Source of the DNA: Amphiscolops sp. MND2022
Taxonomy: Eukaryota
NCBI GenBank assembly: GCA_964187785.1
Contig: OZ076419.1
Coordinates: 36,394,001-36,458,000, forward strand
Length of the DNA: 64,000 nucleotides
Direction: 5' to 3'
Below the pieces are notes generated by a model. That model had not been told where the DNA came from, ran no database searches, and saw only the letters and a program-made list of their open reading frames with translations. The position numbers were made by a program, and so were the translations under genes. Of this stretch, positions 15,060 through 36,542 are shown in pieces. Every line of letters begins with the position of its first letter. The stretch's first letter is position 1.

Positions 15060-15900
15060 GAAAATCCCCGTTTGCCGAATTTTAAAAAATTCCTATTAAT
15101 TATAATGAAACAAATGATTTTGTAACAACTCGAGGAGCGTTTAAGTAGAATGTTTAAAATAGTTAAAACCCCCACCCGGTTTGTCAAATTTAAAAAATCC
15201 CTATTTCTAAATGTAATAAAGCATGAGCCCCAATTTCAGTTGTGGAAAAATAAATTATCGGTGGAAAGAAAGTTCAAAAATTCTCCTGTTTGAATATAAA
15301 TATCTCATATAACAAGAGGGTAAATTTGTTGGGGAGATGGTTTTCAAATTAGATTTTAATTCTTAAATTACGTTCCGGGGGGGACCGGGGAAGGTTCTAA
15401 ACGTATCATGGTTTTTTAAATAAATTTCTCACATGAAGAAACTTCATATCAACTGTAATGAAACAGTTAATTTTGAAACAACTCCAGGAGCGCTAAAATG
15501 AAAGGTATCAAACACCCCCCATGTTTGCCGTTTTTAACATGTAAAAATTTATCCCCAAACACCCCCCTTGTGGCCAATTTCAAAGAACTTCACATCACGT
15601 GTAGGAGAAGTCAATTTTAGAACGACTCCAGGAGCGTTCAAATAGAATGTATCTAATACCTCACCCCTGTTTGCCAAATTTAAAAAACATCATTTCAATT
15701 TTAATTGAAACTGTTAATTTTGGAATGACTCCAAGTCCGTTCAAATTTAATGTACCTCACCCAAACTTTATATCAATTGTATAGAAAAAGCTATTTTTCT
15801 AAAGACTCTAGGAGCGTTCAAATTATTTCAAATATCGCTTTGCACCCTGTTTGACAAAATTAAAAAAAGTGTCATAACAATTTTAATAAAACAGTTGAAC
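15060..15900 (+). repeat. Degenerate subterminal minisatellite carrying the AAC(G/A)ACTCCAGGAGCG motif
   Basis: Recurring block (cccc..gtttgcc(a)aatttaaaaaa...gaaac...ttttg.aac.actccaggagcgtt) with motif copies near 15126, 15477, 15621 and 15801. Confidence 0.7.
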
Positions 15901-16159
15901 TGGTTGTAAAGTTAACAAATGTTGAAAGACATACATTCGTTCCTCGAAATTCTTTCATCTACATGTAATGCCTCTTCAGTTAAGACGAGGAAATACATGT
16001 GTTTAGCATGACACGCAAGTTTATGTTTGTCAATGTGAATCATCTAGCGGCCTCGGCGAACGAAGTACATGTAATGAAGATATTAATCAACCAGTGTAGC
16101 TCCAAATCAGTTGCTTTACTTCGAACAGTTGAATCCTGTTAATTGAGTTGATAACTAAC

Positions 16160-16214
16160 GTTGATAACTCCAGTTGATAACTCCAGTTGATAACTCCAGT
16201 TGATAACTCCAGTT
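16160..16214 (+). repeat. 13-bp tandem repeat (GTTGATAACTCCA)x4
   Basis: Four exact copies plus a partial copy. Confidence 0.95.
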
Positions 16215-16539
16215 CCGAAGCCTGATCAAATTCATCCAGCCTGAGCATTCATCGAAGAAAGTAAGTTTTTATTTATATTAATGTCATTGGAAACTTTATC
16301 AATCAACAAAAACAAGAACTGGTACGAATTTTTCATCCAAATTGGTACAAATAATGAAGATATAGAGTATTGTTTTGTATATTGAAAATAATCGAAATTT
16401 TTAAAAGAAGTTGGTTTCCAATGTTGGGCAATTTTTAAAGAAGGTATACAGTATATGGCAATTTTCGAGGGGAGAGTAACATCACGAAGAGCCTTATATA
16501 TAAATATACATTTAGTGTTGAAAATCGTATAAAAATTCA

Positions 16540-16965
16540 GCGTCTTAACGCTCCTGGAGTCGTTAAAAGTTTTGATTTTATACAAAAACTTAGCTGTTTT
16601 AACGCTCCTGGAATCGTTAAAGTCTCTAAAATCATATATAATTTTTAAAACTTTAACGACTCCAGGAGCGTTGAGACAGCTAAAATTATAGATGATTTTA
16701 AAGACTTTAACGACTCCCGGAGCGTTAAGACAGCTAAATTTATATACAATATTCAAAACTTTAACAACTCCCGGACCTGGACCAGGAGCGTTAAGACAGC
16801 TAAGTTTATATATAAGTTTCAAAATTTTAACGACTCCAGGAGCGTTAAGACAGCTAATATTATATATGACTTTAAAGACTTTAACGACTCCCGGAGCGTT
16901 AAGACAGCTTAATTTATATAAAATATTCAAAATTGCAACTATTCCAGGAGCGTTCAGACAGCTTT
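16540..16965. repeat. 54-bp minisatellite: about 6 forward units preceded by 2 inverted partial units
   Basis: Unit approximately CTTTAACGACTCCAGGAGCGTTAAGACAGCTAAATTATATATAATTTTAAA(G)A. It explains the repetitive ORF 16232-17062. Confidence 0.9.
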
Positions 16966-17181
16966 GAGACCGTTTTTGAGACCAATTTTTTGAGACCGTA
17001 TTACACATTACTGAAGTCAGATGACTTAAAGCGTAGTCGCATGAAAATACTGCCAATATCAATGATAAAATATTGATCGTTTTTCGTTTGATGAGTTTTT
17101 ACTTCGAAACTATAACGACTCCAGGAGCGTTGAGAAAAATAAATATTCGAAATTATTAAACAATCTTTTAAAATCCAGGAA

Positions 17182-20100
17182 ATGCCGCTCAAGAAGTGCC
17201 CTAAATGCTCCTACAAGACAGAGAAACTCTTAAATTTCAACCGCCATGTTGGAAAAAGCCCAGGTGTTGAGACCGAACAGGTTGAAGCCAGAGGAAGTGG
17301 TCATTTTTCTTGTGACAAATGTCTGCTGCCAGTGTCAACTAAGGATGCCCTCGAAAGGCATCAACGGACTGAAAGCTGCGCTAAGAGGGCAGTGGAGCTG
17401 GCAGAAGGTCTTTCCCCGCCTCTGAGGAAATACAGGAAGTTATTCCTCACATAGAAAACGTATGCTGCGCAAAAGTATGCTCGGTACAGTAAAAAACTGC
17501 TCACATCAAACTTGTCTTTTTATCGTTTGATAATTGTGCTGGCGAAGTAGAAACGTACCGCCTATTATGAAAGTCGTCTTAAAAGGCGATGCTATAGGAC
17601 AAATTTTTTTATGTTTCAGAGACTGTAACACGGACGCTGAAAAGCAAAACGTGTGACTCGTGTGGTCAGGTGTTTTCTTTCCGCAGCAACTTGCTGAGGC
17701 ACCTTGATCGAGCTCCCCATCACCAATTTCAGCATAGGGCCTTCTCAAGAGTCCCCAGAAAGTCAGCCAAGGAAGGCAACTATAGGTAGGGAAAATCAGC
17801 CATTATCAAAGAGTTGTTTTTTCAGTTGAACATGTGCAAGGAAGTCAAAAAATTGTTTTCATGCCTAGAAGAGTTAATTCTGTTTTCCAGGTGAGGATAC
17901 TTGCCACGGATAAAAGGATCTGTCTTTTCACTAAATAAAACTTTTGGGTATTGTTTTTAAATGTTCTTAGGTATTACGAGCACATCGAGGGGACCAAACA
18001 GAGTGCCGTCCAAAAGTGCGTTGTGTGGAATGGGGCTGTGGAAAACCAGTCTAAGAAGGTGTTGAACTACCTGTTACATGGTTTTCCCCTCCGATGGAGA
18101 GATGCCAGGCAGAATGTTGAAAGCCTGGTGCTTCCGCATGTCCCCATTGAAGCAGCGACACAGTTTTTGCCCTTAGCAGAGCACATGCTTCGTTACATGG
18201 TTAACCCTGATGTCCCCATTGCAGCAAAGTCGGCAAAACTTAATAAGTTGAGACTAGAAACTTTAATTCAAGGATCACATACTTTTTTTGAAAGTGTAAA
18301 GATATATACAACTTTTGTTCTTTCCCGTATAAAAGTTTTATGACCAGTTATTGGCGTACGTCATTGAGAAACAAGGGAAACACTGGAATAAAGTTTTAAT
18401 AAAAGTGAAATGGGAGGTTCTAAATACATCTGGGGATTCAAAAAATTGACAAGTACACATGCAAGTCGCTTCAAGAAAAGATATTTTGTCTTTGATTTTC
18501 AGACGTTGTGCTTTTTCGAATAGAAAATAGAAATCTATTCCTGAATATATACACAAATATCGGAACGAAGAATCCACAAAATTTTACAATCATATTGAGC
18601 TTCAAAATCATGAACGATTACCTTCAAAGTAATTTTGCAATGGTATGTCATCCAGCGCTGGATTCTTCACAACATGTTAAATTATTGTTTTCTCAATTCT
18701 CCTTTGCTTATGCAGCCAATTTGAAATTGTTTCAGCAGCGACATTTGACCAGAGAAGAATATCTTGTAGAGCAGCGCGCGGGGCCAGAAGCAGCCGGAAA
18801 AGATTTGTTCCCGGTGAATGTCATCAACATCACTCTTGGCCATGAGGTAATTAAATTCATTTTAAACTTTTGTATATAATACTTTTATTCGTTTTTTAAC
18901 TGTTTTTGTTACTTTTGGTTTGAATGAACTACTATGTAGCATTAATTATACTACGGAAAGAATTAAGATATACTCGGTACTTAAATTTAGATCTTTTCAC
19001 CACCCAGTGGCGTGAAAAATGCCGGAGTAGACTCATTTGCGGAATCAAAGTTCGCAGTCGGGGCTGAAAACAGGTTCGTGACGCAGAGCACTTGGAATTA
19101 CCTGCTGCTTTCGAACGACCAGTGTGTGACTCCCTGGCACATAAATTTTGCAAGTACCTGCGTGATTTATGTGGTCCTCCTTGGAGAAAAAATCTTCTGG
19201 CTCGTCAAGCCACCGAGGAAGAATTTGAGGCTCTTCAAGCAGTATAGCGAGAAAAACCCAAGAAGCATGTAAGATATTTTTTCTTGTAAAAAAACATTTG
19301 CCTTCCACAGGAACATGATTTTGAAAAAAACAGCCAAATGAACCGTCGAGCCATTTTTCATCAAACCCCGTCTATTTAATAATGTGTGTCATTTAGATCA
19401 ACATTTTTCGGGGACCTGGTGCAGTTGGAGGGAGGAGGCTGCCACAGGATCCATGCAAAGGCAGGTGACGCCGTTATTTTACCGTCGAAATGGATTCACT
19501 GTGTCCTCACCCATGGCAACTCCGTGGCACTAGGTGCCAATTTCCTTTGCATTGGACACAGTGATTTAATTGTCGCTGCCCCTTTCGACGAAGACGAGGA
19601 TACACGAAAAATATCGTACCAAATACTACAAACACATATGCAAAAGTTGTAACCTGTAACGACTCCGGGAGCATTTTTGCGAATAAGCTGAGAAAAAGTT
19701 TATAACAGCCTTCCCATATTTCTGCGTAACATGAATTGTCTCCCGGAGCATTTTAAGGGAACAATATTCCAATTTGCATTCTTACAAATGTGTCGCCTCT
19801 GATCACGTACCATAACTTAACGATAATCCACCCTCTAATTACTTAATAACTTTATTATACAAAAGCTCCAATAAGCTGTGTTAACTATAGATATCCCTTA
19901 TTGGCGACAATCTTCAACTACCGCAAGATGCGAGTGCCCCACAATGACCGGTACAGGAGCCTGCTTCAAAAAATGGCTAACAAAGTCACGGACGAAGAAG
20001 CCTCTACTAAACGAGTTAGCACTATATACTATTGTTAACCTACTGAAAGCGATTCTTGGTAACTTGAAATAACTTTCATGTAATTAACTGAGAGTAATTT

Positions 20101-20752
20101 TATTGTGACCACTTTTGTAACCATGAATTTGTAACCACTTAATTAAAATCGTTTTGTTCTGGGTTCTCCATGCCTTCAGCATTGAAACACTGAACCTTGA
20201 AGCGAATCTACATATGTACAGCGGAGGCCGTTTTCGCAGAACGAGTCTGAAGGACTTTAGAAAAACCCCACTGCGCATCAATGTCAAGGTGGAGGTAAAG
20301 GTTGGGCTTGATCATCAAGCCACAGTCCCAGATGTCACTAACGAGCCATATGAAGCTTATGATCTCTCTGAGGCAGTTGATGACCTGACTCTGCTCACGC
20401 GGGAGATCATGGATTCACCCCGGCCAATCAGCGGTTACCAAAGAGGTAACCGTTGTTAACTAAATCGTTCAGCTAGAAACAATGTTATGTGCATTAACTT
20501 TTTGTTCCAATCTATACACTCGCTCCTGGAGTCGTTACAGCTAACTTCAGTCGTCCGAACGACCGCACTCTTGTGTTTTCTTTTGCTACCGGAGTCGTTA
20601 AATTGGATTACGTTTCAGATTGGGACCTCAAACGAAAGCAGTTCGTGTCCTCTTCTGTAACAGTGCAGCCTTGGAAGCAATCTGATTTTAGCAGATTCAA
20701 GCACATTGCTGCAATTGCTCCATCAGCACACGAGTTTAACTCTGCAAACTGA
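17182..20752 (+). pseudogene. Multi-exon zinc-finger + JmjC (KDM2/KDM7-like) + ELM2/SANT-like gene, copy A, with lesions
   Basis: Exons encode CPKC..RH, CDKC..RH..C and CDSCGQVFSFRSNLLRHLDRAPH fingers; JmjC TWNYLLLSNDQCVTPWHINFASTCVIYVVLLGEKIFWLVKP and AGDAVILPSKWIHCVLT..VALGANFL; a YPLL helix exon; ELM2 VKVGLDHQATVPD; and a SANT-like PWKQSDFSRF. An apparent +1 indel lies at the first exon end. Confidence 0.85.
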
Positions 20753-21546
20753 CAGGCTTATCATTGTTTTGATTAGAGATTTCTATTTATTAGAGAGATT
20801 AGAAAATTTAAAAAGGTTCGGGAAAAAAATTGTAACAGTTTTTTTAAATTCTGGAGTCGCAGCCTGTAGTTTTATCGTTGTGAAAAATCCATAAAAGGTA
20901 CAACTAAATTCAAGGACCACTACCTTCAAATTAAACTTCCACATGTTTTATCCAATGCGCAGCTACCAGAGAGGTAACCGCGATTTACTAAAGCTTTTAG
21001 CTAAAAACCATGTAATGTTCATTAAACTTTTGTTTAAACCTGTACACTCGCTCCCGTAGTTGTTACAGCTGAATTCAGTTGTCCAAACGAACACACTTTT
21101 TTGCATTCGCTCTGTTTAAAAGATCGTTTTTGAAAATACTATTCCTTCCTAATTTCAAAAAAATGTAAGTTTTTTTTAAATTCTGGAGTCGCACAGCATA
21201 TAGCTGTATTGTTTTAAAAAATATACAACTAAATTCTTGGACCACTACCTTCAATTCAAACTCACACATGCTTTATCATCTGATTGCAGATTCTGCAGAT
21301 TATGGGTAATTATTATTGCCTCAATTCTACTGTGCAATTCAATCTCCGAGCGATTAAAATTGTCCTCATGGACCACTACCTTATCACCTAATTATAGATT
21401 CTTCACATTATGTGTAATTATCAATGCCTCCATTCTACTGTAAAATCCAAACTAGACAATGATGGAGTTATTTGAAAAATGATAGGTGTCATCGTATTGA
21501 GTTTGTCACTTTCCATTTCTTTCAACATAAAAATATAGAACGACCC

Positions 21547-23945
21547 ATGTCAGAGAACTACCATTCAACCACATCAATCAGTTGCTTTCTTGCCAAGTCT
21601 AAAAACAAACTCGCTCTCAGAATGTGTGAACCTTTGGGAAGTATTTCAATTAACAACGGCGATTTGACCAAATAATCACAAAGCAGCCCTTTTCTAACTC
21701 CTATGCAGCCTCCATAACCACTTAACAATGATGCTAATCATCATTATCATAACACCCCTGCACCGCTTCAACATTGTAACTTCTCCTTCCACGAGTCCTA
21801 CTCAGGCCATTTAATCCCATGCCCGCCTAACTTCTCTCAAATTCTGGATCCAAAAACACACCAATGTTATACTCAAAACAGCAATTCATCCACGAACTCC
21901 AGTGATCAAGCGTTGCTAGAACAGTATGAGGCAAGTGCGCTTGCTACTAGCACCGGCCCAACGGGCACCTTGAAGCACAGTCTCAATTATACAGCCAGGA
22001 GTTTAACTGAACCAAGAACAAAATTGCCCCGACAGGAATGGTCGGAGAAAGTAGGACCCCGAATTTAGAAGACAGTTTGAGAAATTGTAGAAGCGTACGA
22101 CACTTGTGGAGCGCTGACGTTCCAACAACAGTTGACACTCTTCCACGGCATTGTCACCCATCTATACATGTATGCTGAGCCCGTCACTGTGATGGCGAAG
22201 AGCAATTTAGCTATGACAGTACATGCCGTCGCCCAAGTTGTGTCACAGCTTGACGAGCTAAGCCAGAACACCGCGTACGAATTGAGCCTTGAACCATCTT
22301 TGGGTAATTGTTTCGTTTTTTGTCAAGTTTGGAGACGAAGTAGAACATTGAATGAAGAGAAATCTTCATATTATTAGAAAAATCATTTTTGCAGAAACAT
22401 TTTTAAAAAGGATCTGTAATGTTACACATTTCTAGAACTGTAAACCTGTTGTTTTAGGAAACACCATTCGATGGCAGCATAAGATATGCTAATGGGCAGT
22501 GAATGCGATGCGGGTCTATCACCTTGGCTTGAGACATAATTTCCAGAGGCAAACACCACAAGTGGTCAAGAGGGCGTTCCCACGGGACGATGACACCGAA
22601 GAGGTGCATACGGAACTTTTTTTGTCACTTCCATGGGAAACACCAACTTTAACCCAAAAATAATTGCAGAAGAGTTTATGGACAAGGTACAGACTTTTCA
22701 ACAATAGTGATTGAACGGTCACTATGCGCAACAGTTATGATGTGATTGTATTTTGTTGTAGATGCAAAAGAATTCACGGGAGACAGTGGACGATGTGCTG
22801 CAGGGTTATGCCAACGAAGCACTTCCCCTGCCAACATCCTGCGACGCCGTCTTCAAAAAGAATGCGCACGCCACAGCAGAGATTCGGAAAACTGTCGACA
22901 TGATCTGGGCTGCCGCTAATGAGGTCACTGAACGACAACTGAGCACCTGTGTGACAAAACGCCTCAATGCACAGCGTTATGTCCGACAAGTGTTGCGAGC
23001 AAAAGAGTTAATTGCATTTTGCAGCAACAAACGAAATCAAGTCAACCCCGCCAGTCAGAGGCTCATTGAGTTCTACAGCAAGAACTGCTGGAACACAGAA
23101 GAAGATCTCGAAAAAGTTTGTAATTCTTAAACATCGGAAGTCAACCAGCAGTCACACTGCTTTAACAATAACTGCTTCAATACCTATAGGATGAAAAACA
23201 AGTATAGCATGTTATTTTTATTCATTGTGTCGTTCAACATTCGAGATTGTGACTGATCGCATTTCTCCGGAAAATAACCAGTAGTCACACTGCTTTGAAA
23301 ATAACTGCTTGAATACCTATAGGATGAAAAACATGTTATTTTTCTTCATTGTTTCTTTAGACATTCAAGATTGTGACTGATCGCCTGAATCCGGAAGCAC
23401 TACAGACTCCATCAGTTGCCCCCGCCACGATGTATTGTTCCTGCCAGACCAGCACAAACAGCCGGAGTCTTTCAAGAAGTCACTTGCCAAACTATGTAAG
23501 TCGCAGCATTGGCCAGCAATCTGCGACGTACAAGTAAAAGGTCTTGGTCGTGGGGTGATCACGATGGCGAAGATCGACAAAGGAGAGATTCTGGCGGATT
23601 ACCACGGAGAAGAGATAAAAGGAATGAAGTTGAACGAGTTCCTTGAAATACCTAGCAACCAAACTGAGTATCTCTTCCAACTAGGCCAGAAACTTTTCAT
23701 CGACGCTTCCAGTGAAGTCTGCAAGGAGCATCCGAACAACAGGTTCCTTGCCAGGTTATTCAACCACAAATCGGCCGAAAAAGCAAATGTGAAGCCAGTG
23801 CTAATAAATATAGCGCCCAACAAAGACGTCCTGGTGTTTGTAGCGAAAACTGAAATCGCTCCCTTCGAAGAGCTTCGCTGATTATGGCAATGAAGAAGCG
23901 AGGCGACTGTTTGACGAAAATTTTTTTGTCTTGAGATTAGTTTAG
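21547..23945 (+). pseudogene. Multi-exon gene ending in a KMT5A/SET8-like SET domain; stops and a 1-bp deletion
   Basis: SET motifs in 23435-23900: KGLGRGVIT, GEILADYHGE, YLFQL..FIDAS, ARLFNH, LVFVAKTEIAPFEELR; restoring one base gives ELRWDYG. Upstream coding-like exons lie at ~21550-22310 (in-frame stops), ~22460-22690 and ~22780-23115. Confidence 0.8.
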
Positions 23946-24114
23946 ATAACGCAGAAAGTGAATTTTAGGTAATTTTTATGTTTTCCAATTAAATTTTTTT
24001 AAATTAGATATGTTTCTGGAGTTGTTACGTTGCAGGAATGAATAAATTTTGAGGACTGAATGTGCTCGCGGAGTCGTTACTTTGTTTGTAAAGGAGTTGT
24101 TGCTTTAGAAAACA

Positions 24115-24478
24115 AGTGTACTTCTACCTTCGAAAAACAACTAGCAATGGTTTAAAATTGATCTCTAGATTCTTCGAACAATGCTTTATATTTGCTTTTT
24201 TAATTCTAGAGCGCTTTCTAAACGCGAGCTGAGCTAATGGTATTTGAAGAATCCACAAAAAAAGCCTAAACAACTGCTCAAAACTAGTGAACCTACGAAC
24301 AGTTACCAGCCATGATTTGAAATTCATTTCTAGATTCTTCAAACAATGCTTTAAAGTCACTTTCTCAATTCTTAGCGCTCATTTTAAACGCGAGCTGAGC
24401 TAATGCTATTTGAAGAATCCACAAAATTCACTGAACTACTTGCTCAATTTTTGTGTAGGGGAGAATTGGAAAGCTGTC
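24115..24478 (+). repeat. Dispersed ~360-bp direct repeat, copy 1 (internal ~130-bp tandem unit)
   Basis: Closely similar to 32423-32783 (GCAATGGTTTAAAATTGATCTCTAGATTCTTC...GAGCTGAGCTAATG...GAAGAATCCACAAA). Confidence 0.85.
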
Positions 24479-25147
24479 GAATACGGTCCCTAAATAATTG
24501 CTCCCGGAGTCGTTACAAATTAATGGGAAAGGTCTTTTTTGCATCGATTGGAAGGTATATTTGAAGATCCAATAAACTGCGCTACTGCATCCTTTTTTGA
24601 TGTGAAAAGGATAAATCAGTTCTTGATTGTTATTGTCCTTTAGAGCGATAGGAAGGCACAATTGAAGATCCACTGCATCCAGGGGTGTTCAATAAATAAT
24701 TATGAGTAGGAATAACTGAAATGCATAAAATAAAATAATTTACTTCTACACTCAAATGAAGAGAAATAATTATTTTTGAACCTGTCAAAAGAATAATAAT
24801 TATTCTTGAGGTGACTAAAACTAACTAAGGACGTTTAATTCAACATATCGTAAGCCATATTAATTCGAATATACAGAAATCTTGAGCTTTCCAGAAATAC
24901 CTTTGTTGAGTACCTTGGGGTACTGACTCAAAAGGTCGAAGAATCCAATAAAAAAACACTGTCTTTGCGTTTTGGCCTGATTATGGATGGCTAATTTAAG
25001 TTTTTGTTGATATCCGTTTTTCGCTGAGAATAAAAACATTTCGTTTAACAAAAAAATGATAAAATTGTTTATTTTCCACTACGAAAATAAATTAATTTAA
25101 TTTTAGGCAACAATAATATTCGAATAAAATATTGAACACCCCTGACT

Positions 25148-26870: not shown

Positions 26871-27006
26871 TACTGTTCGATCTCTTAGTTGAACAATTCG
26901 TTCAATTAGGCAGATATCTTGTCAACACTTTTGTTGATCATTGTTCTTTTAACCGCTACCACAATCCCCCGCCGGCAGTTGACGGTTGGGAATTTTCATT
27001 AATATA

Positions 27007-30000
27007 CTAATGAAAACTTATTAGTAACAAGAACAAAAGTGAGTTATGCGCTGACGGAGCAATGGCAACGACGTCTCTGTACTTCATGAAATCAGACTGC
27101 AGCCAAGCTGCAGCCAAGGCCTGACTTCGAAAGAGCGGGTAGTGAATTTTTTTTTCTGTAAGGCTTCATTCTAAAACAGTAACATGCAGTCTTAACAAAT
27201 CTGGGAGTGAGTGTCTACGGGAGGGGGACCATTGAATGACTTGGAAATTAAGAAAAATAATAAAAAGATTTTTCAAATGCAGATTTTGAACAACCATAAC
27301 TTTGAAGGTGAAAGTTCTTTTGAATGCATAAGTACCATTTTTTTCGAATACAAATACCTCTTCGGTGGGTTTGTAGCGGCTGCGGAGTGGCTGCAATCTC
27401 TCGATTGACCAATGTGAGACTAACTACGGCCTCACACCGATCGTCTTCAGCATACGGTGGCTGGTTGCATGGAGGGATGGCTGGTTGGAAATTGGAACCG
27501 ACCATGATCATCGGTTTTCGTTTCGGAACGAGGGCCAAGTTCGTCTTCTTCAGGTTGATGGTCAAGAAACTTCCTCCTGAATAACGTTTCTTGTTTGGCT
27601 CCTCGTCGAACAGCCATGTTGAAGGCAGGGAACACCTGTAACAAACACAACGTTTATCTTAACAGTTTTATTGGGGACCATTTGGGGCCTAAGTACTATT
27701 GAGATACTGTTAGGATACATATCTACCCCTCGTAAATATTATCAATTTGAGGGTTGCTCACAACAACAAAACAACGAGCATGTTTGCTAGAAGACTTACT
27801 TCTGTAGTGGAGGCTTCTCAGTCCTTCTTGTGTTCTGCCACTTTTTGGAAGAGGTGCCTGTACTCATCACCCAAGTAGTTGGGGTGCAGCTTGCGGTAGT
27901 TGTACAGCAACACACTCCACACTGTCGTCAAACTGGGATATCTGGAATACATAAATACGATACTCAAGGTAACAATTTACAAGGGAACAATTGGTGGAGG
28001 TGTGTTACATGTGACACTTATATTGTTCTATTGAGAATGCAATAATTTTTCTCAAACTTACACTTATGTTCCCTGACAAATTGCTCCTGGAGTTGTTACA
28101 AAACTTTGTTGGGGGAGTGTTTTGAATTGGTCCCGAAAGATGCTCCCGTAGTCGTTACAAAATATTGGGAGGGGTTGTGTCTTTTATTACATTTTGAATT
28201 GATTGCCGAACATGCTCCCGGAGTTGTTACAAAATAAAAAAGGGGGGTGTTTCTGCTTTCTCTAATGTCCACAAAGGATTCCTACACTTTCTCGTTCCAG
28301 CTATATAGATGGTAAAGGAAGTATAGTGATGTTGTATATCTACTATATATAAAACTTTATCGTGTATCTTCTTCAAAGTCGAAGTGGGCATCCACAATTA
28401 GTCTACTGTGCCCGAAACTCAGGAAATTGGCACCAAGTGCCATAGAGTCGCCCTGGGTAAGGACACAGTGGACCCACTTTGAAGGCAGAATAATGGCATC
28501 AGCTGCCCTTGCGTGGATGCTGTGACAGCCCCCCTCTAACGTCTGCAGGTCTCCAAATGATGTTGTTCTAAATATCACACATAAGAAACACAAATTAGGG
28601 GTTTTGATAGAATTCAGTTGGGTGCTTAATTTTAGCATTACTCGAAGAATGACAATTTTTTCCTGAAGAGATTGTCTATTTCATGTACAATAAACGATCA
28701 TAGGTTTTAGCGAAATGACGTGAAGTACGATGTTTATACTTACAGGCTGCGAGGGTCTTTCTCACTGTACTGCTGGAAGAGTTGCAAGTTCTTCCTTGTT
28801 GGCTCAACAAGCCAGAAGATTTTCTCACCGAGCAGTACCACGTAGAAAATTGACATGCTTGCGAAATCTATGTGCAACGGGGTGACACATTTGTCGTTGG
28901 ATAGTAGCAGGTAGTTCCACGTGCTCTCCGTCAAGTACCCATCGCTCTGCCAGTTTTGACTCAACATAGCGGTCGATTGCGGCATTTCGTACCGCAGTAG
29001 GTGGTGAAAACATCTAAAAACGAATGTACTTGAACTACTTGAAATTCGAAAGTTGCTTTTTTGGGAAGAAAATTTCGCAGAGACGAGTTTGTATTGTTTA
29101 CATAAGGGAACTGGGCACCTATGAAATCTAATTTGTCAGTCACTTTCAAAGTTACTTTAAAAAATTTTTTCTTCACTTTACTTCTTAACTAGTTTAGATT
29201 TTATCTAAATATCTCATTACCGCATGTTGAAGGGTGGCATCTATCACGTTGACTGGAAAGAGTCCCTCACGGGCTGCTTCTGGACCTGAACGCTGTTCCG
29301 CCAGATACTCGTCTCTGGTCAAACTTCGTATCTGCAAATACATTTTGTCTTCTAGTTCAGATGAATTTTTGTTCAATGCACAACGCAGTAGAATTGAGAC
29401 AATAGTGACTAAACACGTTGCGAAGCATCTACCACTGGATAACAAACCATTGAAAATTAACTTTGAAGGTAGTAGTACATGATTTCAAAACTACACAAAA
29501 CAAACAATTTCGTGGATTCTTCGCAAATATGTGATTTGATCAATTTTGTTTTGGCTGCGTGAACGCAGTAGAAACGGGACAATAATGATAAAACACGTTG
29601 CGAAGAATCAACCACTGGATAATAAACCATTGAAAATTAATTTTGAAGGTAGTGGTTCAGGATTTTACAACGATACACTTAGAAAACTTCGTGGATTCTT
29701 CAGAGCAATAAATACACGCGTTTGCCTATATTGCGTGCGTGTAAATCCAGGAGAGTTTTTTTGTAAGTCAACAGCAATTTATAGTGTAAAATCTCACCTC
29801 GTTCACTTTTGCCGACTTTGCAGATATGGGGACATCTGGGTTGGCAACGTGCTGCAACAAATGTTCTGCCAGAGGCAGAAACTGAGTTGCCGTGTCTTCC
29901 GGAACATAGGGAATGACGAGACCTTCCGCGTTGTCCCTGGCTCTTTTCCACAGGATAGGGAAACCATGGGACAAATAGGAGAAGATCTTCTTCGTCTGGT

Positions 30001-30928
30001 ATTCCACGGGTCCATCAAAAACAACGCACTTTGGGATGGCACTTTCAATTGTCCCCTCAATGTGCTCGTAGTACCTAAGAACAAAAAATTAACTACCTTG
30101 TATTCAAGGTCTTTATTATCCTGGCAACAAAAACCAATTCGGAATAAACATTGATTTTAAACTACCTATAGGCAAAAAAGTTTGAATTTCGACATCTGTT
30201 GTATTGTGTTAAGGTCAGCTATAGTTTTAACTTAATACGTATTTTATATTTCCTTCATTTCGTTCAAATTTGCAATAACATATTTTGCCTAATATTACTT
30301 GATTACAATATGTATTCTGTAGCATTGTTTTCAGCTCCAATTTCCATTACCTGTAAGTGCCGTCCTTGGCCGACTTTCTGGGGAACCGTGAGAAGTTCAT
30401 GTCCTTGAACCTGTGATGCGGCGCTCGCTCCAGATGGCGCTGCAGATTGCTCCGGGAAGAAAACTGCTCTCCACACCCCGCACAGCTCGTTGACTTGAGT
30501 TTCCCTGTTACAGTCTCTGGAATAAAGCAAAAACCAACTTAAAACATGGGCGTTACATTTCAATACCGCAAGCTCAACTATCAAATTATCATTAATTTCT
30601 TTAAAGTATAAAAGATTCTTGTAACCATATGATTTGTATCAAAACAGTTTCTGTAGATAGGTTTAAAATGAGATCAGTAACTTCTGTATTTCTTCAGGGC
30701 TGGGGAGTCACCTTGAGCCAATTCACTTGCCTTCTTGGCACAGCTCTGCGTCTGCTGATGGCGTTTGAGAGCATCTTTTGTCGACACAGGTTGTAAACAC
30801 ACGTCGCAAGTGAAACCACCACTTCCGCTCGCCTCCTCCGGCACCGGCGTGGGCCTTTGGCATTTTTGGACGTGTCTGTTGTAGTTAAACAACCTGGTCG
30901 ACTCGTACGGGCACTTGGGACACTTCAT
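27007..30928 (-). pseudogene. Multi-exon zinc-finger + JmjC + ELM2/SANT-like gene, copy B, with lesions
   Basis: Exon-by-exon paralog of copy A: CPKC..RHVQKC, CDVC..RHQQTQSC, CAGCGEQFSSRSNLQRHLERAPH; TPLHIDFASMSIFYVVLLGEKIFWLVEP; AADAIILPSKWVHCVLT; IMVGSNFQPAIP. It has a small deletion before the JmjC core, a TGA in the post-JmjC exon and an 11-bp duplication in the last exon. Confidence 0.85.
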
Positions 30929-32422
30929 CTGGGCTTTTGGCGGCTCTTTCTGGTTTTTAAAAAGAAATCAATTTATTTGTTTATTTGGTTTTCTCAAGTT
31001 CTGTTTCCTAATTCCCTTATATTCATCACGCTCATGGAGCCGTTACAACCACCGCTCCTGGAGTCGTTACATCTAACTAAACATTTGTATTTAGTCCTGT
31101 TATGATTATGCTCATGGAGTCGTTACAGGAATTTCCCAAATAACATAAGAGCAAAAACCATAAAATTAGTTTCAAATAACAAAACTCTAATGGGTTTCAC
31201 TAAACACGATATTTGAAACTTATTTCAGTTTCATGTTATTTGACACTAATTTTGCTTCTATGCTATTTGCACTTGCTATTTGGTACGTAATTGTCGTTAA
31301 ATATTTCTAAACATTTGTGTTATATCTTCAAGATATCTTCAACTAATTTTATGCTATTGGCTCTTATGTTATTCGGGAAATCCCCGTAACGACTCCATGA
31401 GCATGATAATAACTGGACTAAATACAAACGTTTAGTCAGATGTAACAACTCCATGAGCGCGACGAAAATAAGTTATTTTCATCGCGCTCTTGGAGTCGTT
31501 ACATCTGGCTAAATGTTTGTTTTAACTGGAACAGCTGCAACTTTTTGGGACGGGAAAGCTTAAATTGTACCAAAAATAAAACACTTGATTTTCTTCACTG
31601 GAAGATTGAAATTGTTTGATTGTTCAAATTGGAGTCTTCGCTTGCAGTCTTCGTGAAATTCTTCAGGAGGTTGAGAAAACGACTGATTGTCAGCAGCACT
31701 GGTTGTTTAATAACGTTATTGGATAAAGCGCGGGATCTTGAAGTTTGTTTACATGACGCACCAAATTCTGCGAGTCATGGTCACGTGACAAAATGTTCAT
31801 CTAATTCCATGTACATGTAACGTTTTTGGATCAAGCGAGGTATTTTGTGTACATGACGCACTAAAGTCTGCGAGTCATGCTCACGTGACAAAACGTTCTT
31901 TAAAGATTTGTAGAGATTTTAAAGAATTGTAAAGAGCAAGGGAGGAAATGAGTGAAATAATGGAAGAATTCACGAAGAAATTCTATTTTCATAAATTCTT
32001 TTACGAACCATGCCGGGACTGAACGAAATTTTCACCGAACGGAACCGAAAGTATCGGAGATGATATGACGCCATAAAGAACTATATTGAATTTAATGTAG
32101 TTAACGAATGATTTCGCTCTTATCAATGCAATCTATTTGAACGCTCCTGGGAGTCGTTACAAAAATAACTGTTTCATTAAAATGATATAAAGTTTTCCGA
32201 GGTTAATAATTGGAAGGAGGAGGGTTTTTGATACATTTTCTTTGTTCCTGGAGTCGTTACAAAATTATCAATACAAACACAGGTTTTTTGATTATTTGAA
32301 TTATCAATACAAAAAACGTTAGGAAACTTAGGAAAAGAAGTTTGATCATTAGTAGTTTGCACAGTTGAAGTCTCAAGTTGAACAAATGTGGGCGATGGAA
32401 TGTTGGTGGGCGATAGAAAACC

Positions 32423-32783
32423 AATGTACTACTACCTTTGAATAACAAATAGCAATGGTTTAAAATTGATCTCTAGATTCTTCAAACAATGCTTTAAAGT
32501 GACGTTCTCAATTCTAGAGCGCTTTCTAAACGGGAGCTGAGCTGATGGTGTTCGAAGAATCCACAAAAAAGCCGAAGAACTTGCTCAAAACATGTGTAAT
32601 ACTACGTACATATAGTAACCAGTAAAGGGTCAAAATTGATCTCTAGATTCTTCAAACAATGCTTTAAAATTACTTTCTCAGTTCCAGAGCGCTTTCTAAG
32701 CGCGAGCTGAGATAATGTTTTTCGAAGAATCCACAAATTTCACCAAACTACTTGCTCAATTTTTGTGTGCTGGAGAATTGGAA
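32423..32783 (+). repeat. Dispersed ~360-bp direct repeat, copy 2
   Basis: Matches 24115-24478. Confidence 0.85.
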
Positions 32784-32981
32784 CTGACGAACGTGAATAG
32801 TTATTTGGAAACGTTTCAAATTTGAACATTTTAAAATATTACAGACGGACGTTACATATCTCATGCGGAGAAAAATGTCATAAACTGTTCCTTTTCTTAT
32901 TTTACTTGAAAAGAGCCACATATGTATCGTCTGGCTGCTCTTTTGTTCTTGTTCTTTTGCGAGAGAGTTTTAAGGAAGTAA

Positions 32982-35900
32982 TCAAAATCTGTAATCACCG
33001 TCTGATGCTCCGGCGTTTCTTTGTCTCTCAAATAATGGGCGTTGATCGTTGACACAAGCTCGCTTGATTGTATCATTACCTGACATCACGTATTCGGAAG
33101 GATCCAAAACACAGCCTATTTTCATCTTCAATGTATGTCACCTTTATAAATTTGAAATCAGTGGCGGCAAAATTCCCTGCATATTCTGGCTGTTCCTTGA
33201 GCTGCTGCTTTCTTCATTGTTTTCGATGCAGCCGGTTTCCGTTGAGTTGTCGACGTACATGTGTCGCTGTCCGATTCAGGAGCCGCGCATTGCTCACTCC
33301 GCGTTGCCCTGAGTAATTCAGTGTCGTTTTTTAACACAACAAAACAGTTTGGGGTTGAAGAATGACGCTTAGATAGACCAAGAGTTTTGTCCTTACTCAA
33401 CACCCCCCCAAACGGGTAATTGTATCCTCTAGTGCTTTTGCAGTATTCCAGAGAAGTGTCCAACCACGTGAAACCGAAGTGCACTCAACAACCTGCATGA
33501 ATCACGAGTGGCACCTATTTCTATAATGGCAGGCTTGACAACATTTTTGCAGATTTCAAAATAAGTTGTAGTTTGTTCGTATTCTTTTTGCAGTTGGGTA
33601 AACAAATCGCTCACTGCTATTTTTTTCTGTTTCGAAACTATGTCGAGATAATGGCAGTAAGAAAAACAACCTTCAAAAAATAAAGGATCAGGGTTGTACA
33701 GTTTCCCTCCGCCTCGCATCGTTTTTCTTTGGAACTCCTTGTGTGCGTGATGGTTTGATTTCTCCATCGTCTCACACATGTGGTGCCAGGGACTACGAAC
33801 AAATCCTGCCTGCATTATTTCAGGTACTAGCATCATTTCCAATTTATAGGGTGTCAGACCTTCTTTTCCGGAAAAAAGAAGCAGCGATGACTGGTAGTAT
33901 GTCTCTGACCAGAACTTGAATTGCTCCACGTCTAGTCCGTGTTTGGATGACCGGAAAATGATGGCACGTTTGTTAAGAATTCCTTGTAAAAGATTCGCGC
34001 AATCGTTTGTTGTGAACTGTTCAGATTTCTCTAGATTAGGTTGCATTTTTTTTAGAACTGCAAAAGCGTTGGTGGCAGCACGTGGAATTTCTTTGTCTGT
34101 GTTGTTTTTTACATTCTCAAAAAGGATTTCTTTTCCCCATTGTCTGTGTTGTTGTTTACATTCTCAAAAAGGATTTCTTTTCCCCATTTCGTTCTCGAAA
34201 AGGTTCGGAATATCTTGCCCAAGTTCATCTTTGTCAGCGATAGCAATTAGCGTTGAAGTTCCTGATAGCGATACAGGTCCAACAACTCCTTTTTTCAAAT
34301 CGGTGCCTTTCACTTGCAGGTCAAATTGGAATCTGGGTTTTTTCATCTCTCTTCGAGTGCAGTTATCTTCCAACTGTTGTAAGGCCACTTTGTAAAGCGG
34401 TTTCTCGTTTACTATTTTATGTGCTGCTTTGCGAAGGTCACTCTCTACACACCTTGTGATCATATGCGTAACGTCTAGCATGACACATCTTATATCCTCA
34501 AGGTACACTAGAGAATTTTGTGGAACTTCTTTTCTGAAAGGCGCTTCGAGATCGTGGCGTAATCCAGTGTTTTTATCCACATCTGTAGGAAAAAATTTTT
34601 CAGATCCCACATATAAAGCCAAATCAGACGGGTACAGGTTCGATGCATCGCTGTCTATCGCCAGTATGAGACGATACAGAAAAGGACTGTCGCAGGAACA
34701 TGTAACCACCGCCCCTTGTGTGCTTAACTCTTTTGTTTGCTTGTACAGCCACCCCGTCTCCTGTTTTCCATCTATATCTGGCCCCCAATTTTGCTCCAGT
34801 ACAAATCTGCTATCTTTTCCTCGGAAAGCTAAACAAAACGACTTTAAAAAATGCTTATTAGAAGAATTTGGATATTTTTATCTTACAAAATTTTCTAGAT
34901 TGTGTACATTGAATTGATTTCAAATCATACGGTAAATTAGGTAGTAAAATTGAGGAGCTAAGAAGTACACATAATATGAAAATTCTATGATTGGATGAGA
35001 AAACATGTGAAAATATAATTTGAAGGTAGTGGTCATGAATACATACTAATGTCATATTTTTTTTGGAATCTTCAAAACAAAAAAAATCTACTAGGTTAAT
35101 TGATAAAAGAAAGCAAATTGCTAACTTACCACTGAAGCAAGCAAAACGTTATGCTTGATGACTGTGCTGTGATTTCCTCCGAGAAATCCTGTAAAATTCG
35201 GAAACACATCCTTGTGTGATCAATACCACCAACTTCACAGCCGTCACCCCACAAATCAATGTTCAGCCCCGGTATCTTTTCTCTGCTCCGATGTTAAAAT
35301 GGAAAGTTTAGGTTTGTTTGTTTTTTTGAAGAAAGTGATTATTGGGTTTTCTTTCAGAAATCTACCGACGAAGTTCCGCTCATCTTGTTTCCATGTGTAA
35401 ATGGAATATTGCATGAAGGTGGCAGAGTCCTGGACCACTGTGGCCAATCAGCTAAAATTCGCAGCCTCAAGCTGATATGGAGGAAAGAACAACCTCTCGT
35501 TCTCGTTACAATGGCCTCGGAGCAATGCGAGGACGTTTTAATCACCATGCCCTCGACGAAAGTTGTGTTCCAGGAGGAGAACTTTATGAGCAACACAAAT
35601 CATGAAAAATTAACTGGAAGCGTTGAACACCCTGTTGGTAGGGTGTGCTCGGTGTTTGCAGCCGTGAAAAACGCCGTTGAAATCGCCTTGTTGTCGCGGA
35701 CTGGGTATGCAGGGATCTTACGTGTTGCGAATGATCTTTCCACAACAGCCCTTGGAAAACAATAAAGACGTGATATTCCAAAAATCAATTCCCGCAGACG
35801 AAAAAGGATGCCATGAGTCATGGGACACTGTGTTGGGCAAACAGTGGGACAGGAAGGCTGGCGGTTATAGCGAGACAGACAAATTCATCAAGTCGATGAG

Positions 35901-36086
35901 ATTCATGATAAAAAATCTTTTGCTGTATCGTTGATAAAATGCAGCGTTGTAGTGTTCGGTGGTGTTTACCCAGTCACGAAGTACATGGAGATCATTCAAC
36001 AAAATATGGCGGCAGATATGGAGGAAAACGTCCTGTAGTTCACGATGTATTGGAGTCAATTCTTTTTGAAACTTTTTAGATTTCAA
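32982..36086 (-). pseudogene. RAG1/Transib(Chapaev)-like DDE transposase with C-terminal BRCT-like domain, intron-containing, disrupted
   Basis: Ordered motifs: IDLWGDGCEVGG (D at 35243-5), LFRGKDS, TCSCDSPFLYRL (D at 34689-91), MLDVTHMITR, LTPYKLEMMLVPE, CETMEKSNHH..F.RKTMRGGG (E at 33762-4), then LSALRFHVVG..LEDTITRLGG..TPNCFVVL..FKFIKVTYI..LDPSEY (BRCT-like). An intron begins at 35129 (GTAAGT). There are frameshifts and a 47-bp tandem duplication near 34095-34190. Confidence 0.75.
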
Positions 36087-36542
36087 ACCTTTAAAAGGTT
36101 GTTTTTCTTTGTAATCAAATACTTTTGTGCTGCATGGAACATTTATAAAATAAATTATTCTCCTCGTTTGTTTATTCTCCTTACAAAGTTGAATGTAAGA
36201 AAAAGTTATTAAAAACCATATACGCTCCTGGAGTTGTTACATTGTCATTTTTGAAATGTTGTTTACAATATAAATATTTCATCAAAAAACTCTGAAAATG
36301 ACATTTCAATTTGAACCTACGTCTCATTCTGCCGATATCCTATTCTTTTCAACTCTTGCGTACAATGAGTCACAATATACAAAATTTAACAATTGAATCA
36401 AGTAGCAAAAACCAGTCACAATGAGAAAATAAAAGAATTCCGAAAGTCAACGTTTGTCTTGATCAAAATAGCTCTAGCTGAGACTATCAATTCGGGTGAT
36501 TCACCTAACGCGCCATCACACATCAGCTAACCCAAAAAATAT

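What the first reader, a model, noticed from the sequence alone, without database searches (positions are those of the whole stretch)
15113..36240. A 17-bp motif (TAACGACTCCAGGAGCG) is scattered about 30 times through the element and sits co-oriented upstream of three start codons
Seen: forward copies near 15126, 15477, 15621, 15801, 16655-16940 (array), 17113, 19658, 31388, 31444; reverse copies near 16547, 16601, 20521, 20587, 21051, 24015, 24064, 24501, 28083, 28141, 28211, 31029, 31053, 31109, 31483, 32141, 32247, 36223. All are non-coding, and I noticed none outside 15.1-36.3 kb. A sense-oriented copy lies 52 nt before the JmjC-A ATG, ~100-140 nt before the JmjC-B ATG and ~140 nt before the putative transposase ATG. 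Known: VANC proteins bind short motifs amplified in tandem arrays across their cognate VANDAL elements. Inference: this is the self-recognition site for the element's zinc-finger JmjC proteins or transposase.
Basis: partly seen in the sequence, partly recalled or inferred. Interest (0 to 1): 0.75.

Follow-up and report, generated by a model that had tools for sequence, protein, structure and literature searches.

The report
Transposon's own 19-bp recognition motif
A short, nearly palindromic DNA word is repeated about 30 times in the non-coding parts of a 23-kb animal jumping gene that carries its own histone-modifying genes, which makes it a good candidate for the address label by which the element's own proteins find it, though no binding has been shown.

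Summary
TAACGACTCCAGGAGCG occurs 29 times (up to 3 mismatches; 32 with weaker copies), all at 15123-36239; chance predicts 0.03. The genome has 649 near-exact copies against 1 for a reversed control, and all 30 sampled lie in copies of this transposon group.

- **Core.** It is a discrete 19-bp imperfect dyad, TGTAACGACTCCAGGAGCG. Flanking information is near zero, so it is not debris of a larger repeat.
- **Element.** It runs from about 14622 to 37291. It has 26-bp terminal inverted repeats, a 2-bp target duplication, a RAG1-fold transposase with a BRCT domain, two zinc-finger/JmjC/ELM2 genes and a SET gene.
- **Placement.** The motif fills promoter-proximal, intronic and intergenic spacers but avoids the tips.
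- **Conservation.** Between the two JmjC paralogues, and in a relative about 70% identical, these motifs are essentially the only conserved non-coding words.

Most likely the motif is a cis-element read by an element-encoded protein. The zinc-finger JmjC proteins are the best candidate and the transposase is the rival. Binding is untested. The claimed transposase ATG 140 nt downstream could not be verified.

Earlier notes of this scan describe the same transposon family elsewhere in this genome. The notes retrieved do not mention the motif.

The parts
14622..37291 (.). The transposon copy, about 22.7 kb. Homology to other copies runs 14629-37287. The family TIR consensus is CATTACGACGCCAAACAGGGAACTTT, and the outermost 4-7 bp of both tips are mutated in this copy.
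   Evidence: homology boundaries in more than 40 copies; TIR; 2-bp target duplication in 6 independent paired ends.
15123..15816 (+). Motif M1, left-arm dispersed copies at 15123, 15476, 15620 and 15800, plus a degenerate one near 15723. They begin about 0.5 kb inside the left tip.
   Evidence: The same positions hold in 12 other left arms.
16549..16952 (+). M1 54-bp tandem array: 2 inverted copies (16549, 16603) then 7 direct copies. It lies 230-630 bp upstream of the JmjC-A ATG.
17113..17129 (+). Perfect M1 copy 52 nt before the JmjC-A ATG (17182), followed by an A/T-rich TATA-like stretch.
   Evidence: It is one of the few non-coding stretches conserved with the JmjC-B upstream region.
17182..20730 (+). 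JmjC-A gene: three zinc fingers (two in exon 1, one near 17640-17720), a KDM7/PHF8/KDM2-like JmjC domain, and tail exons. The iron-binding HxD motif reads H-I-N in this copy.
19657..19673 (+). M1 copy in the intron after the JmjC exon of gene A. The equivalent intron of gene B holds three copies.
20521..21065 (-). M1 copies at 20521, 20584 and 21049, spanning the last intron of gene A and the spacer before the SET gene.
   Evidence: (repeat family D8).
21689..23900 (+). SET-domain gene. Its closest solved relatives are KMT5A/SET8.
24011..24515 (-). M1 copies at 24011, 24063 and 24499, interleaved with M2 copies at 24245, 24328 and 24411.
27047..30928 (-). JmjC-B gene: three zinc fingers, a JmjC domain with H-I-D...H intact, and an ELM2 domain.
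28082..28229 (-). Three M1 copies (28082, 28141, 28213) in the intron after the JmjC exon of gene B.
   Evidence: Conserved in the divergent relative L074.
31029..31501 (-). M1 cluster upstream of the JmjC-B ATG: 31029, 31053, 31109 (-), 31387, 31443 (+) and 31485 (-). It includes a 126-nt inverted repeat.
   Evidence: (inverted repeat I4).
32142..32259 (-). Two M1 copies downstream of the transposase gene: a 1-nt-insertion variant at about 32142 and a copy at 32243.
33021..35284 (-). Transposase-like gene. Recognisable exons are 35284-35138, 34838-33402 and 33409-33021, with one in-frame stop. It has a RAG1-like core fold plus a BRCT domain. The 5' end is unresolved.
36223..36239 (-). The only right-arm M1 copy, 1.05 kb inside the right tip and about 940 nt upstream of the first recognisable transposase exon, in sense orientation.
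   Evidence: same position in 16 other right arms.
14675..15010 (-). Second motif M2 (TGAAGAATCCACAA), left subterminal cluster at 14675, 14827, 14917 and 14997.
   Evidence: Other copies have it at fixed distances of 54, 208, 298 and 348 from the tip.
36848..37103 (+). M2 right subterminal cluster at 36848, 36939, 36978, 36999 and 37090, inverted relative to the left cluster.
   Evidence: distances of 191, 282, 342/352 and 432/443 from the tip in other copies.
38854..41166 (+). Tandem duplicate (99.8%) of 36543-38855, that is, the last 745 bp of the element plus 1.57 kb of flank. It is not a second element end in its own right.

Best explanation
The motif (M1, core TGTAACGACTCCAGGAGCG, an imperfect dyad) is a conserved, family-specific cis-element of a large cut-and-paste DNA transposon. 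It lies in the non-coding spacers of the element: an inner left-arm array, promoter-proximal copies before both JmjC genes, the same intron of both JmjC genes, the spacers around the SET gene, and upstream of the transposase. The element tips carry a different repeated motif (M2).

My best reading is that M1 is the docking site of an element-encoded sequence-specific protein. The prime candidates are the two proteins that join three zinc fingers to a KDM7/PHF8-like JmjC demethylase domain and an ELM2 tail. Docking would bring the demethylase, and any partners recruited through ELM2, to the element's own promoters and to its non-autonomous derivatives. That would remove repressive histone methylation and keep the family transcribable and mobile. 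This would work like plant VANC or Spm TnpA, but by a histone route.

Shown here:
- the motif is real, enriched, family-restricted and discrete;
- its placement and its conservation;
- the gene content of the element.

Inferred:
- that a protein binds it;
- that the protein is the zinc-finger JmjC protein;
- that the outcome is anti-silencing.

Layered odds:
- functional protein-binding element, about 0.8;
- bound by an element-encoded protein, about 0.6;
- bound specifically by the zinc-finger JmjC proteins, about 0.4.
For: - **Count and restriction.** 29 copies fall only within the element against 0.03 expected. The genome has 649 copies against 1 for the reversed control; I expect about 3 from base composition. 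All 30 sampled loci are copies of this element group.
- **Discreteness.** Information content is high only at positions -1 to 17 and near zero in the flanks. The core therefore sits in several unrelated contexts.
- **Dyad symmetry.** This suits a dimeric binder.
- **Paralogue comparison.** JmjC-A and JmjC-B are about 72% identical in their exons. Outside the exons, the main conserved stretches are M1 copies upstream of the ATG and in the same intron.
- **Divergent relative.** In an element about 70% identical from another assembly, every 12-mer repeated at least 3 times in both elements belongs to M1 (11 words) or M2 (1 word). M1 also sits in the equivalent places there.
- **Ancestral state.** Site consensuses across copies are closer to the canonical motif than the window copy is. 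Ancestral elements therefore had even cleaner sites.
- **Tips.** They are occupied by M2 at fixed distances in inverted orientation. M1 never comes closer than about 385-475 bp to the left tip or about 980 bp to the right tip in full-length arms.
- **Candidate binders.** The element encodes proteins with three C2H2/C2HC fingers fused to a JmjC domain, and B keeps H-x-D...H.
- **Precedent.** VANC21 binds a motif that is enriched in the non-coding regions and tandem repeats of its own family (PMC5735166).
Against: - No binding or chromatin data exist, and no RNA runs were found.
- Within the family, motif columns are no less variable than background (0.073 against 0.066). Inserted copies therefore decay neutrally, and constraint is visible only between lineages.
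- The three fingers are separated by long linkers. By my own reading of the canonical recognition code, they do not predict the motif. This is a weak test.
- M1 points inward from both tips and is kept in all short derivatives seen. That fits a transposition role equally well.
- No covariation between zinc-finger sequence and motif could be tested, because the motif is the same in every relative I could read.
- The JmjC-A copy in this window reads H-I-N at the iron site, and this whole copy is old and probably immobile.
Confidence: 0.4

Rival explanations
1. M1 is an accessory binding site of the transposase, or of its unresolved N-terminal DNA-binding part. It would help end pairing or transposition, or it would let the transposase act as a sequence-specific transcriptional activator of cognate copies.
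For: - Read inward from either tip, M1 has the same orientation in both arms in 12 left and about 16 right arms.
- Every short derivative seen keeps some M1 copies (L036, L038, L041).
- A sense copy lies 0.75-0.95 kb upstream of the first recognisable transposase exon in the window and in relatives L074 and L075.
- Longer homologues have about 300 more N-terminal residues of unknown function.
- Precedents: Spm TnpA, and AtMu1 transposase as an activator of cognate copies (bioRxiv 10.64898/2026.08.24.746577).
Against: - M1 is absent from the terminal 385-475 bp (left) and about 980 bp (right). A different motif, M2, sits there at fixed distances in inverted orientation, the classical position of transposase or accessory sites.
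- Many M1 copies lie deep inside the element, in introns and between genes, more than 5 kb from either tip.
- From general knowledge, RAG1 and Transib enzymes recognise only their terminal heptamer/nonamer signals.
- The inward orientation is also what promoters of the two inward-transcribed outer genes would give.
Confidence: 0.25
2. M1 is a promoter or enhancer module read by a host transcription factor, for example a dimeric factor active in the germ line. The element would have multiplied it to drive its genes.
For: - The motif has dyad symmetry.
- Copies sit 52 nt and 100-180 nt before two start codons, each followed by an A/T-rich TATA-like stretch.
- The 54-bp spacing in the array is about five helical turns.
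Against: Near-exact copies are essentially confined to this transposon group: 649 against about 1-3 expected, with 30 of 30 sampled loci inside elements. A host factor should also have sites at host genes. The 17-mer search at up to 1 mismatch would, however, miss degenerate host sites. I recognised no known factor consensus, from memory only.
Confidence: 0.17
3. M1 has no function. It would be a piece of sequence spread by local duplications, by nested insertions of a small element, or by recombination scars.
For: Several copies did arise by local duplication: the 54-bp array, the 157-nt repeat at 20424/20952, and the inverted repeat at 31053/31334. The segment from about 24.5 to 32.4 kb looks like an inverted partial relative inserted into the element, and that doubled several clusters. 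Copies decay at the neutral rate after insertion.
Against: - Only 19 nt are shared between the different contexts, so no larger unit was spread.
- The motif survives where surrounding non-coding DNA has diverged beyond alignment, both between the JmjC paralogues and between families about 70% identical.
- Deletion breakpoints of derivatives do not fall inside motif copies.
Confidence: 0.07

Closest known systems
VANC anti-silencing proteins and their target motifs in Arabidopsis VANDAL (Mutator-like) transposons (Hosaka et al. 2017, PMC5735166; Sasaki et al. 2023, PMC10398659)
   Same: A short motif is highly enriched in one transposon family and rare elsewhere. It lies in non-coding regions (upstream regions and introns), at high density, and partly as tandem repeats. 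The element encodes a non-transposase protein that could read it and counteract silencing.
   Different: - The host here is an animal, not a plant.
- The transposase has a RAG1-like fold and is not a MULE transposase.
- No VANC homologue was recognised.
- The candidate reader is a zinc-finger protein with its own JmjC histone-demethylase domain, so the proposed route is histone demethylation and not DNA hypomethylation.
- The motif is a 19-bp dyad, not a 9-mer.
- Binding and the effect on chromatin are untested here, whereas they were shown for VANC21.
- No motif divergence between related families was seen here, whereas VANC targets differ between families.
En/Spm (CACTA) TnpA and its 12-bp subterminal binding motifs (own knowledge; TnpA as regulator: bioRxiv 10.64898/2026.08.24.746577)
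   Same: The element carries many copies of a short motif in direct and inverted orientation. These are read by an element-encoded protein that is not the cutting enzyme and that can reactivate silent copies. Both are large elements with many internal-deletion derivatives.
   Different: TnpA motifs sit in the terminal 200-300 bp of both ends. Here that position is taken by M2, while M1 is internal. The termini read CATTACG... with a 2-bp target duplication, not CACTA with 3 bp. No TnpA-like protein was recognised.
Transib / Chapaev / RAG1 group of DDE transposases (Kapitonov & Koonin 2015, PMC4411706)
   Same: The transposase-like protein's core aligns with the RAG1 catalytic core: Z 12.6, rmsd 4.0 over 257 residues, using the model of homologue P0020.
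   Different: - The target duplication is 2 bp, where Transib gives 5 bp.
- The termini are not CACAATG.
- There is a C-terminal BRCT domain.
- No Pfam RAG1 or Transib domain is detected by sequence.
- The element carries passenger chromatin genes and dispersed internal motifs, which that paper does not describe for Transib or Chapaev.
Fungal DNA transposons (KDZ and others) carrying TET/JBP dioxygenase genes (PMC12730594, abstract only)
   Same: These are cut-and-paste transposons that carry a 2-oxoglutarate/iron dioxygenase able to erase a repressive epigenetic mark.
   Different: - The enzyme acts on DNA methylation, not histone methylation.
- The hosts are fungi.
- I know of no cognate dispersed DNA motif or fused zinc-finger reader in those elements.

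Membership tests
VANDAL/VANC-type sequence-specific anti-silencing system | Motif strongly enriched in the cognate transposon family and rare elsewhere in the genome | tested here: met
   649 genome hits against 1 for the reversed control. 30 of 30 sampled loci lie in copies of the element group. None occurs outside the element in the window.
VANDAL/VANC-type sequence-specific anti-silencing system | Motifs lie in non-coding regions at high density, partly as tandem repeats | tested here: met
   All copies lie outside recognisable exons. There is a 54-bp tandem array of 9 copies, and clusters occupy every intergenic spacer.
VANDAL/VANC-type sequence-specific anti-silencing system | Element is a Mutator-like element encoding a VANC protein | tested here: not met
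   The transposase has a RAG1-like fold. Pfam scans of the exons show zf-C2H2, JmjC, ELM2 and SET only. The target duplication is 2 bp, not the 9-10 bp of MULEs. VANC itself was not searched for directly.
VANDAL/VANC-type sequence-specific anti-silencing system | The element-encoded protein binds the motif and causes loss of silencing marks on cognate copies | not testable with these tools
   This needs EMSA, DAP-seq or ChIP and chromatin profiling. No RNA runs were found for this stretch.
En/Spm (CACTA) TnpA-binding subterminal repeats | Motif copies concentrated in the terminal few hundred bp of both ends, in direct and inverted orientation | tested here: not met
   M1 starts 385-475 bp (left) or about 980 bp (right) from the tips. 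M2, not M1, fills the terminal 50-450 bp.
En/Spm (CACTA) TnpA-binding subterminal repeats | CACTA termini and 3-bp target duplication | tested here: not met
   The termini read CATTACGACGCC... and the target duplication is 2 bp in 6 of 6 independent paired ends.
Transib superfamily (RAG1-like transposons) | Transposase with a RAG1-like catalytic core | tested here: met
   The model of homologue P0020 (43% identical to the window ORF, mean pLDDT 81) aligns with the RAG1 core at Z 12.6, rmsd 4.0, 257 residues. Sequence methods find nothing, and plain Foldseek is only weak.
Transib superfamily (RAG1-like transposons) | 5-bp target duplication and CACAATG-type termini | tested here: not met
   2-bp duplication and CATTACG... 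termini.
MITE or nested small-element remnant | Copies share sequence beyond the core (arms, TIRs, target duplications) | tested here: not met
   Information content falls to about 0 outside the 19-nt core.

The most novel reading that the evidence does not exclude
This would be the first sequence-specific, transposon-encoded anti-silencing system described in an animal. A zinc-finger-guided JmjC histone demethylase, possibly working with the element's SET enzyme, would home to a private 19-bp dyad motif spread through the non-coding DNA of its own RAG1-fold transposon family and its non-autonomous derivatives. It would erase repressive histone marks only there.
Probability: 0.3. Interest if true: 0.85.

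Novelty: new variant of a known kind. Interest (0 to 1): 0.66.

Why it matters
How transposons escape host silencing is well worked out in only a few plant cases, notably VANC and Spm TnpA. Here an animal DNA transposon with a RAG1-like transposase carries a chromatin toolkit of two zinc-finger JmjC demethylase genes and a SET methyltransferase gene. It also carries a private, conserved DNA word placed where a self-targeting factor would need it.

The motif turns a general idea, that the element edits its own chromatin, into specific experiments:
- a defined 19-bp probe;
- defined zinc-finger domains;
- a natural 9-copy array for reporter assays;
- a second motif (M2) as a built-in contrast for the transposition machinery.

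If binding is confirmed, it would also provide a compact pair of DNA word and reader domain for targeted chromatin editing.

Tried and rejected
- **Selection within the family.** Motif columns are as variable as the rest (0.073 against 0.066; local flanks 0.088). This gives no evidence of constraint on inserted copies. That is expected for dead copies and does not count against function.
- **Transposase by sequence.** phmmer of the two transposase ORF pieces against the PDB found nothing. Pfam on the pieces and on ten full-length homologues found only BRCT. The word-based protein search returned only fragments from one ENA assembly. The language-model atlas gave only a weak RAG1 lead. Plain Foldseek against the PDB gave no hit at E up to 0.001. 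Only the VIA re-alignment gave a clear RAG1-core match.
- **Other full-length copies.** I therefore could not read full-length copies such as C5:24359894-24384238 or C13:40278093-40302172 end to end.
- **Distant homologues.** Contigs for P0020, P0022 and P0030 were only 2-5 kb and gave no context. Zinc-finger/motif covariation across distant families could not be tested.
- **Expression.** No RNA runs were found.
- **Bacterial promoter/terminator scan.** It is irrelevant to a eukaryotic element and was disregarded.
- **Zinc-finger recognition code.** I applied the canonical code by hand. Fingers 1 and 3 would favour GA-containing triplets, but the fingers are far apart and no contiguous 9-mer in the motif fits. 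I give this no weight.
- **Recombination-site idea.** Deletion breakpoints of derivatives lie near motif copies but not inside them (for example 16529 against 16549, and 36200 against 36223). I rejected the idea for lack of support.

Full report
**1. The observation**

A search for TAACGACTCCAGGAGCG with up to 3 mismatches finds 29 copies, all between 15123 and 36239. Shuffled sequence gives 0.03. Relaxing to 4 mismatches adds 16762 and 24011. A copy with a one-base insertion lies at about 32142; I inferred it from the overlapping 11-mers.

It is not.
- The 1.07-Gb genome has 649 copies with up to 1 mismatch, against 1 for the reversed pattern.
- I expect about 3 from base composition.
- The hits fall in clusters of 6-25 kb.
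- All 30 loci fetched around perfect hits carry homology to this element within 1.5 kb.
- With 12 such sites in the window copy, this corresponds to roughly 50 element equivalents.

**2. What the motif is**

Aligning the 30 window copies shows high information only at positions -1 to 17, giving TGTAACGACTCCAGGAGCG. The flanks are close to zero. The shared unit is therefore a discrete 19-mer and not part of a larger dispersed repeat.

At least seven flanking contexts exist:
- a left-arm set at 15123-15816;
- a 54-bp tandem array at 16549-16952;
- the promoter-proximal copy at 17113;
- an intronic type at 19657 and 28082-28213, also seen at 24499 and 32243;
- a pair at 20521 and 21049;
- the cluster at 31029-31501;
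- the copy at 36223.

Three sequence variants recur: CCAGGAGCG, CCGGGAGCA and CCATGAGCG. The half GTAACGACTCC and the block GAGC are almost invariant. The motif is an imperfect dyad, TTAACG(A)CTC-CAG-GAGCGTTAA. It folds at -5.2 kcal/mol as single-stranded DNA, z = -2.9. Most deviations in this copy are CG-to-CA changes, and the consensus of other copies restores the canonical motif at several sites.

**3. The element**

- **Ends.** Other copies end in a 26-bp terminal inverted repeat, CATTACGACGCCAAACAGGGAACTTT, flanked by a 2-bp target duplication in all six independent copies for which I hold both ends. In the window copy the outermost 4-7 bases of both tips are mutated.
- **Duplication.** The last 745 bp plus 1.57 kb of flank are tandemly duplicated at 99.8% identity: 36543-38855 matches 38854-41166.
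- **Family.** It has many internal-deletion derivatives of 1.3-9 kb and a few copies of 18-25 kb.
- **JmjC-A (+, ATG 17182).** It has three zinc fingers and a JmjC domain nearest to KDM7/PHF8/KDM2.
- **SET gene (+, about 21.7-23.9 kb).** It is nearest to KMT5A.
- **JmjC-B (-, ATG 30928).** It has the same fingers, a JmjC domain with an intact H-x-D...H, and an ELM2 domain.
- **Transposase-like gene (-, 35284-33021).** Sequence methods leave it unclassified. A profile search found full-length relatives. The model of one of them (P0020, 43% identical to the window ORF, mean pLDDT 81) aligns with the RAG1 catalytic core at Z 12.6, rmsd 4.0, 257 residues, and with BRCT domains at Z about 11. This agrees with earlier scan notes. 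The 2-bp duplication and the termini do not fit Transib proper (PMC4411706).
- **Inserted segment.** The stretch from about 24.5 to 32.4 kb carries JmjC-B and its upstream motif cluster. It looks like an inverted, partial copy of a sister family, bounded by direct repeats at 24106-24471 and 32414-32783. This explains why the right half of the element carries mostly reverse-strand copies.

**4. A second motif, and where each one sits**

An unbiased count of 11-mers repeated in the element turned up a second word, TGAAGAATCCACAA (M2).
- It has 27 copies at up to 2 mismatches, all inside the element or its duplicated end, against 1.2 expected.
- The genome has 530 exact 15-mers against 5 for the control.
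- In 12 left arms and about 16 right arms of other copies, M2 sits at fixed distances from the tip: 54, 208, 298 and 348 on the left; 191, 282, 342/352 and 432/443 on the right. It is inverted between the two ends. This is the classical layout of subterminal sites for the transposition machinery.

M1 behaves differently. It never comes closer than about 385-475 bp to the left tip or about 980 bp to the right tip of full-length arms. Instead it fills the spacers before, inside (in introns) and between the genes. Read inward from either tip, M1 has the same orientation in both arms.

**5. Conservation**

After insertion, copies decay neutrally. Motif columns are as variable as the rest of the element. 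Constraint shows between lineages.
- The two JmjC paralogues are only about 72% identical in their exons. A sensitive alignment of the two loci recovers the exons and little else. The clearest non-coding matches are M1 copies, upstream of the ATG (17113 with 31053) and in the same intron (19655 with 28231 and 28159).
- A relative about 70% identical from another public assembly (L074, ENA ERZ25074608) has M1 in the equivalent places. These are the left-arm array, upstream of its JmjC gene, in the JmjC intron, and upstream of its transposase.
- Every 12-mer repeated at least three times in both elements belongs to M1 (11 words) or M2 (1 word).

**6. How it most likely works**

Shown:
- M1 is a private, discrete, dyad-symmetric word.
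- It is conserved over the divergence of this transposon group.
- It is placed in regulatory-type positions, and it is distinct from the tip motif.

Inferred: a sequence-specific protein reads it.

The element's own zinc-finger JmjC proteins are the most economical candidates. They join a DNA-reading module to a histone demethylase. Both genes are preceded by M1 and carry it in an intron, and the element also carries a SET enzyme. The model is self-targeted removal of repressive histone methylation, acting in trans on all family members that keep M1.

This works like VANC in VANDAL elements. VANC motifs are likewise family-specific, non-coding, dense and often tandem (PMC5735166). It also resembles Spm TnpA. 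It is not a member of either system (see the membership table).

The main rival is that the transposase reads M1, either for transposition or as an activator of cognate copies, as recently proposed for plant transposases. The inward orientation of M1 in both arms and its retention in short derivatives fit that rival. The occupation of the tips by M2 and the deep internal copies argue against it. A host factor and a non-functional repeat are less likely, for the reasons given under the rival explanations.

**7. What is not confirmed**

The sense copy '~140 nt before the transposase ATG' could not be verified. The first recognisable exon lies about 940 nt from the motif at 36223, and I could not find upstream exons. 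Longer homologues do have about 300 more N-terminal residues, so a start near the motif remains possible.

**8. Limits**

- No binding, chromatin or expression data were available.
- Exons were searched one by one by reference. The joined spliced models were not built or searched.
- The statement that the host is an animal comes from earlier scan notes and from the domain repertoire (ELM2, KMT5A-like SET). I did not test it.

**9. Novelty**

Full-text searches found no description of a transposon-borne zinc-finger JmjC gene with a cognate motif. Fusions of transposons with chromatin readers and writers are known (bioRxiv 10.1101/2021.11.30.470311), and so are fungal transposons with TET/JBP genes (PMC12730594). 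Earlier notes of this scan describe the same transposon family on other DNA of this genome. The summaries retrieved do not mention the motifs.

I rate this a new variant of a known kind, namely transposon self-recognition motif arrays. It carries a testable and potentially important mechanism.

Noticed in passing
window 14675-15010, 36848-37103, and internal sites (18566, 20881, 21392, 24245-24411, 26002, 26092, 29510, 29689, 32553, 32723, 35061): A second family-specific motif, TGAAGAATCCACAA, forms inverted subterminal clusters at fixed distances from both tips and also occurs internally. It is probably the site used by the transposition machinery. On the first contigs listed it also occurs alone, away from M1, so it may mark further related families or solo ends.
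   Followed up: partly
window 36543-38855 and 38854-41166: A 2.3-kb tandem duplication at 99.8% identity spans the right terminal 745 bp of the element plus 1.57 kb of flank. It is either a very recent duplication or an assembly artefact.
   Followed up: partly
window 14622-14628 and 37288-37291: The outermost 4-7 bases of both terminal inverted repeats differ from the family consensus, which is otherwise invariant in about 40 copies (AGTTGCT for CATTACG on the left, CTGG for AATG on the right). Both tips being altered in the same copy is odd.
   Followed up: no
window 19130-19140 (JmjC-A exon 18991-19269): The iron-binding HxD motif reads H-I-N in JmjC-A of this copy and in one other copy (L021). 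JmjC-B and most other copies read H-I-D.
   Followed up: partly
window 16146-16214: A 13-bp tandem repeat, AGTTGATAACTCC, of 5.3 copies lies just upstream of the M1 array. Its TAACTCCAG part resembles M1 lacking three bases, so it may be a half-site array.
   Followed up: no
window 25155-25514: An 84-bp tandem repeat of 4.3 copies at 88% identity has an open frame on the minus strand (25201-25566) and lies between the SET gene and the tail of JmjC-B. It could be a repetitive peptide-coding exon or a non-coding array.
   Followed up: no
window 14542-14624 and 26136-26333: There are two near-perfect palindromes. One has 41-nt arms at 95% and directly abuts the left end of the element. The other is a nested palindrome of about 200 bp inside the element (arms of 65 nt at 95% and 38 nt at 97%), which looks like a small foldback insertion.
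   Followed up: no
window 24106-24471 and 32414-32783: Direct repeats at 78-89% identity bound the segment from about 24.5 to 32.4 kb. That segment carries JmjC-B in inverted orientation and resembles the left part of a sister family, so the copy appears to be a chimera of two related elements.
   Followed up: partly
L075 (ENA ERZ25074608, ctg181144) 11.3-20.9 kb: In a relative from another assembly, the SET gene region is tandemly amplified five times with a period of about 2.08 kb. Each unit carries a pair of M1-like copies 54 bp apart and one M2 copy.
   Followed up: no
window 44781-44980: A 200-N assembly gap. It was left untouched.
   Followed up: no
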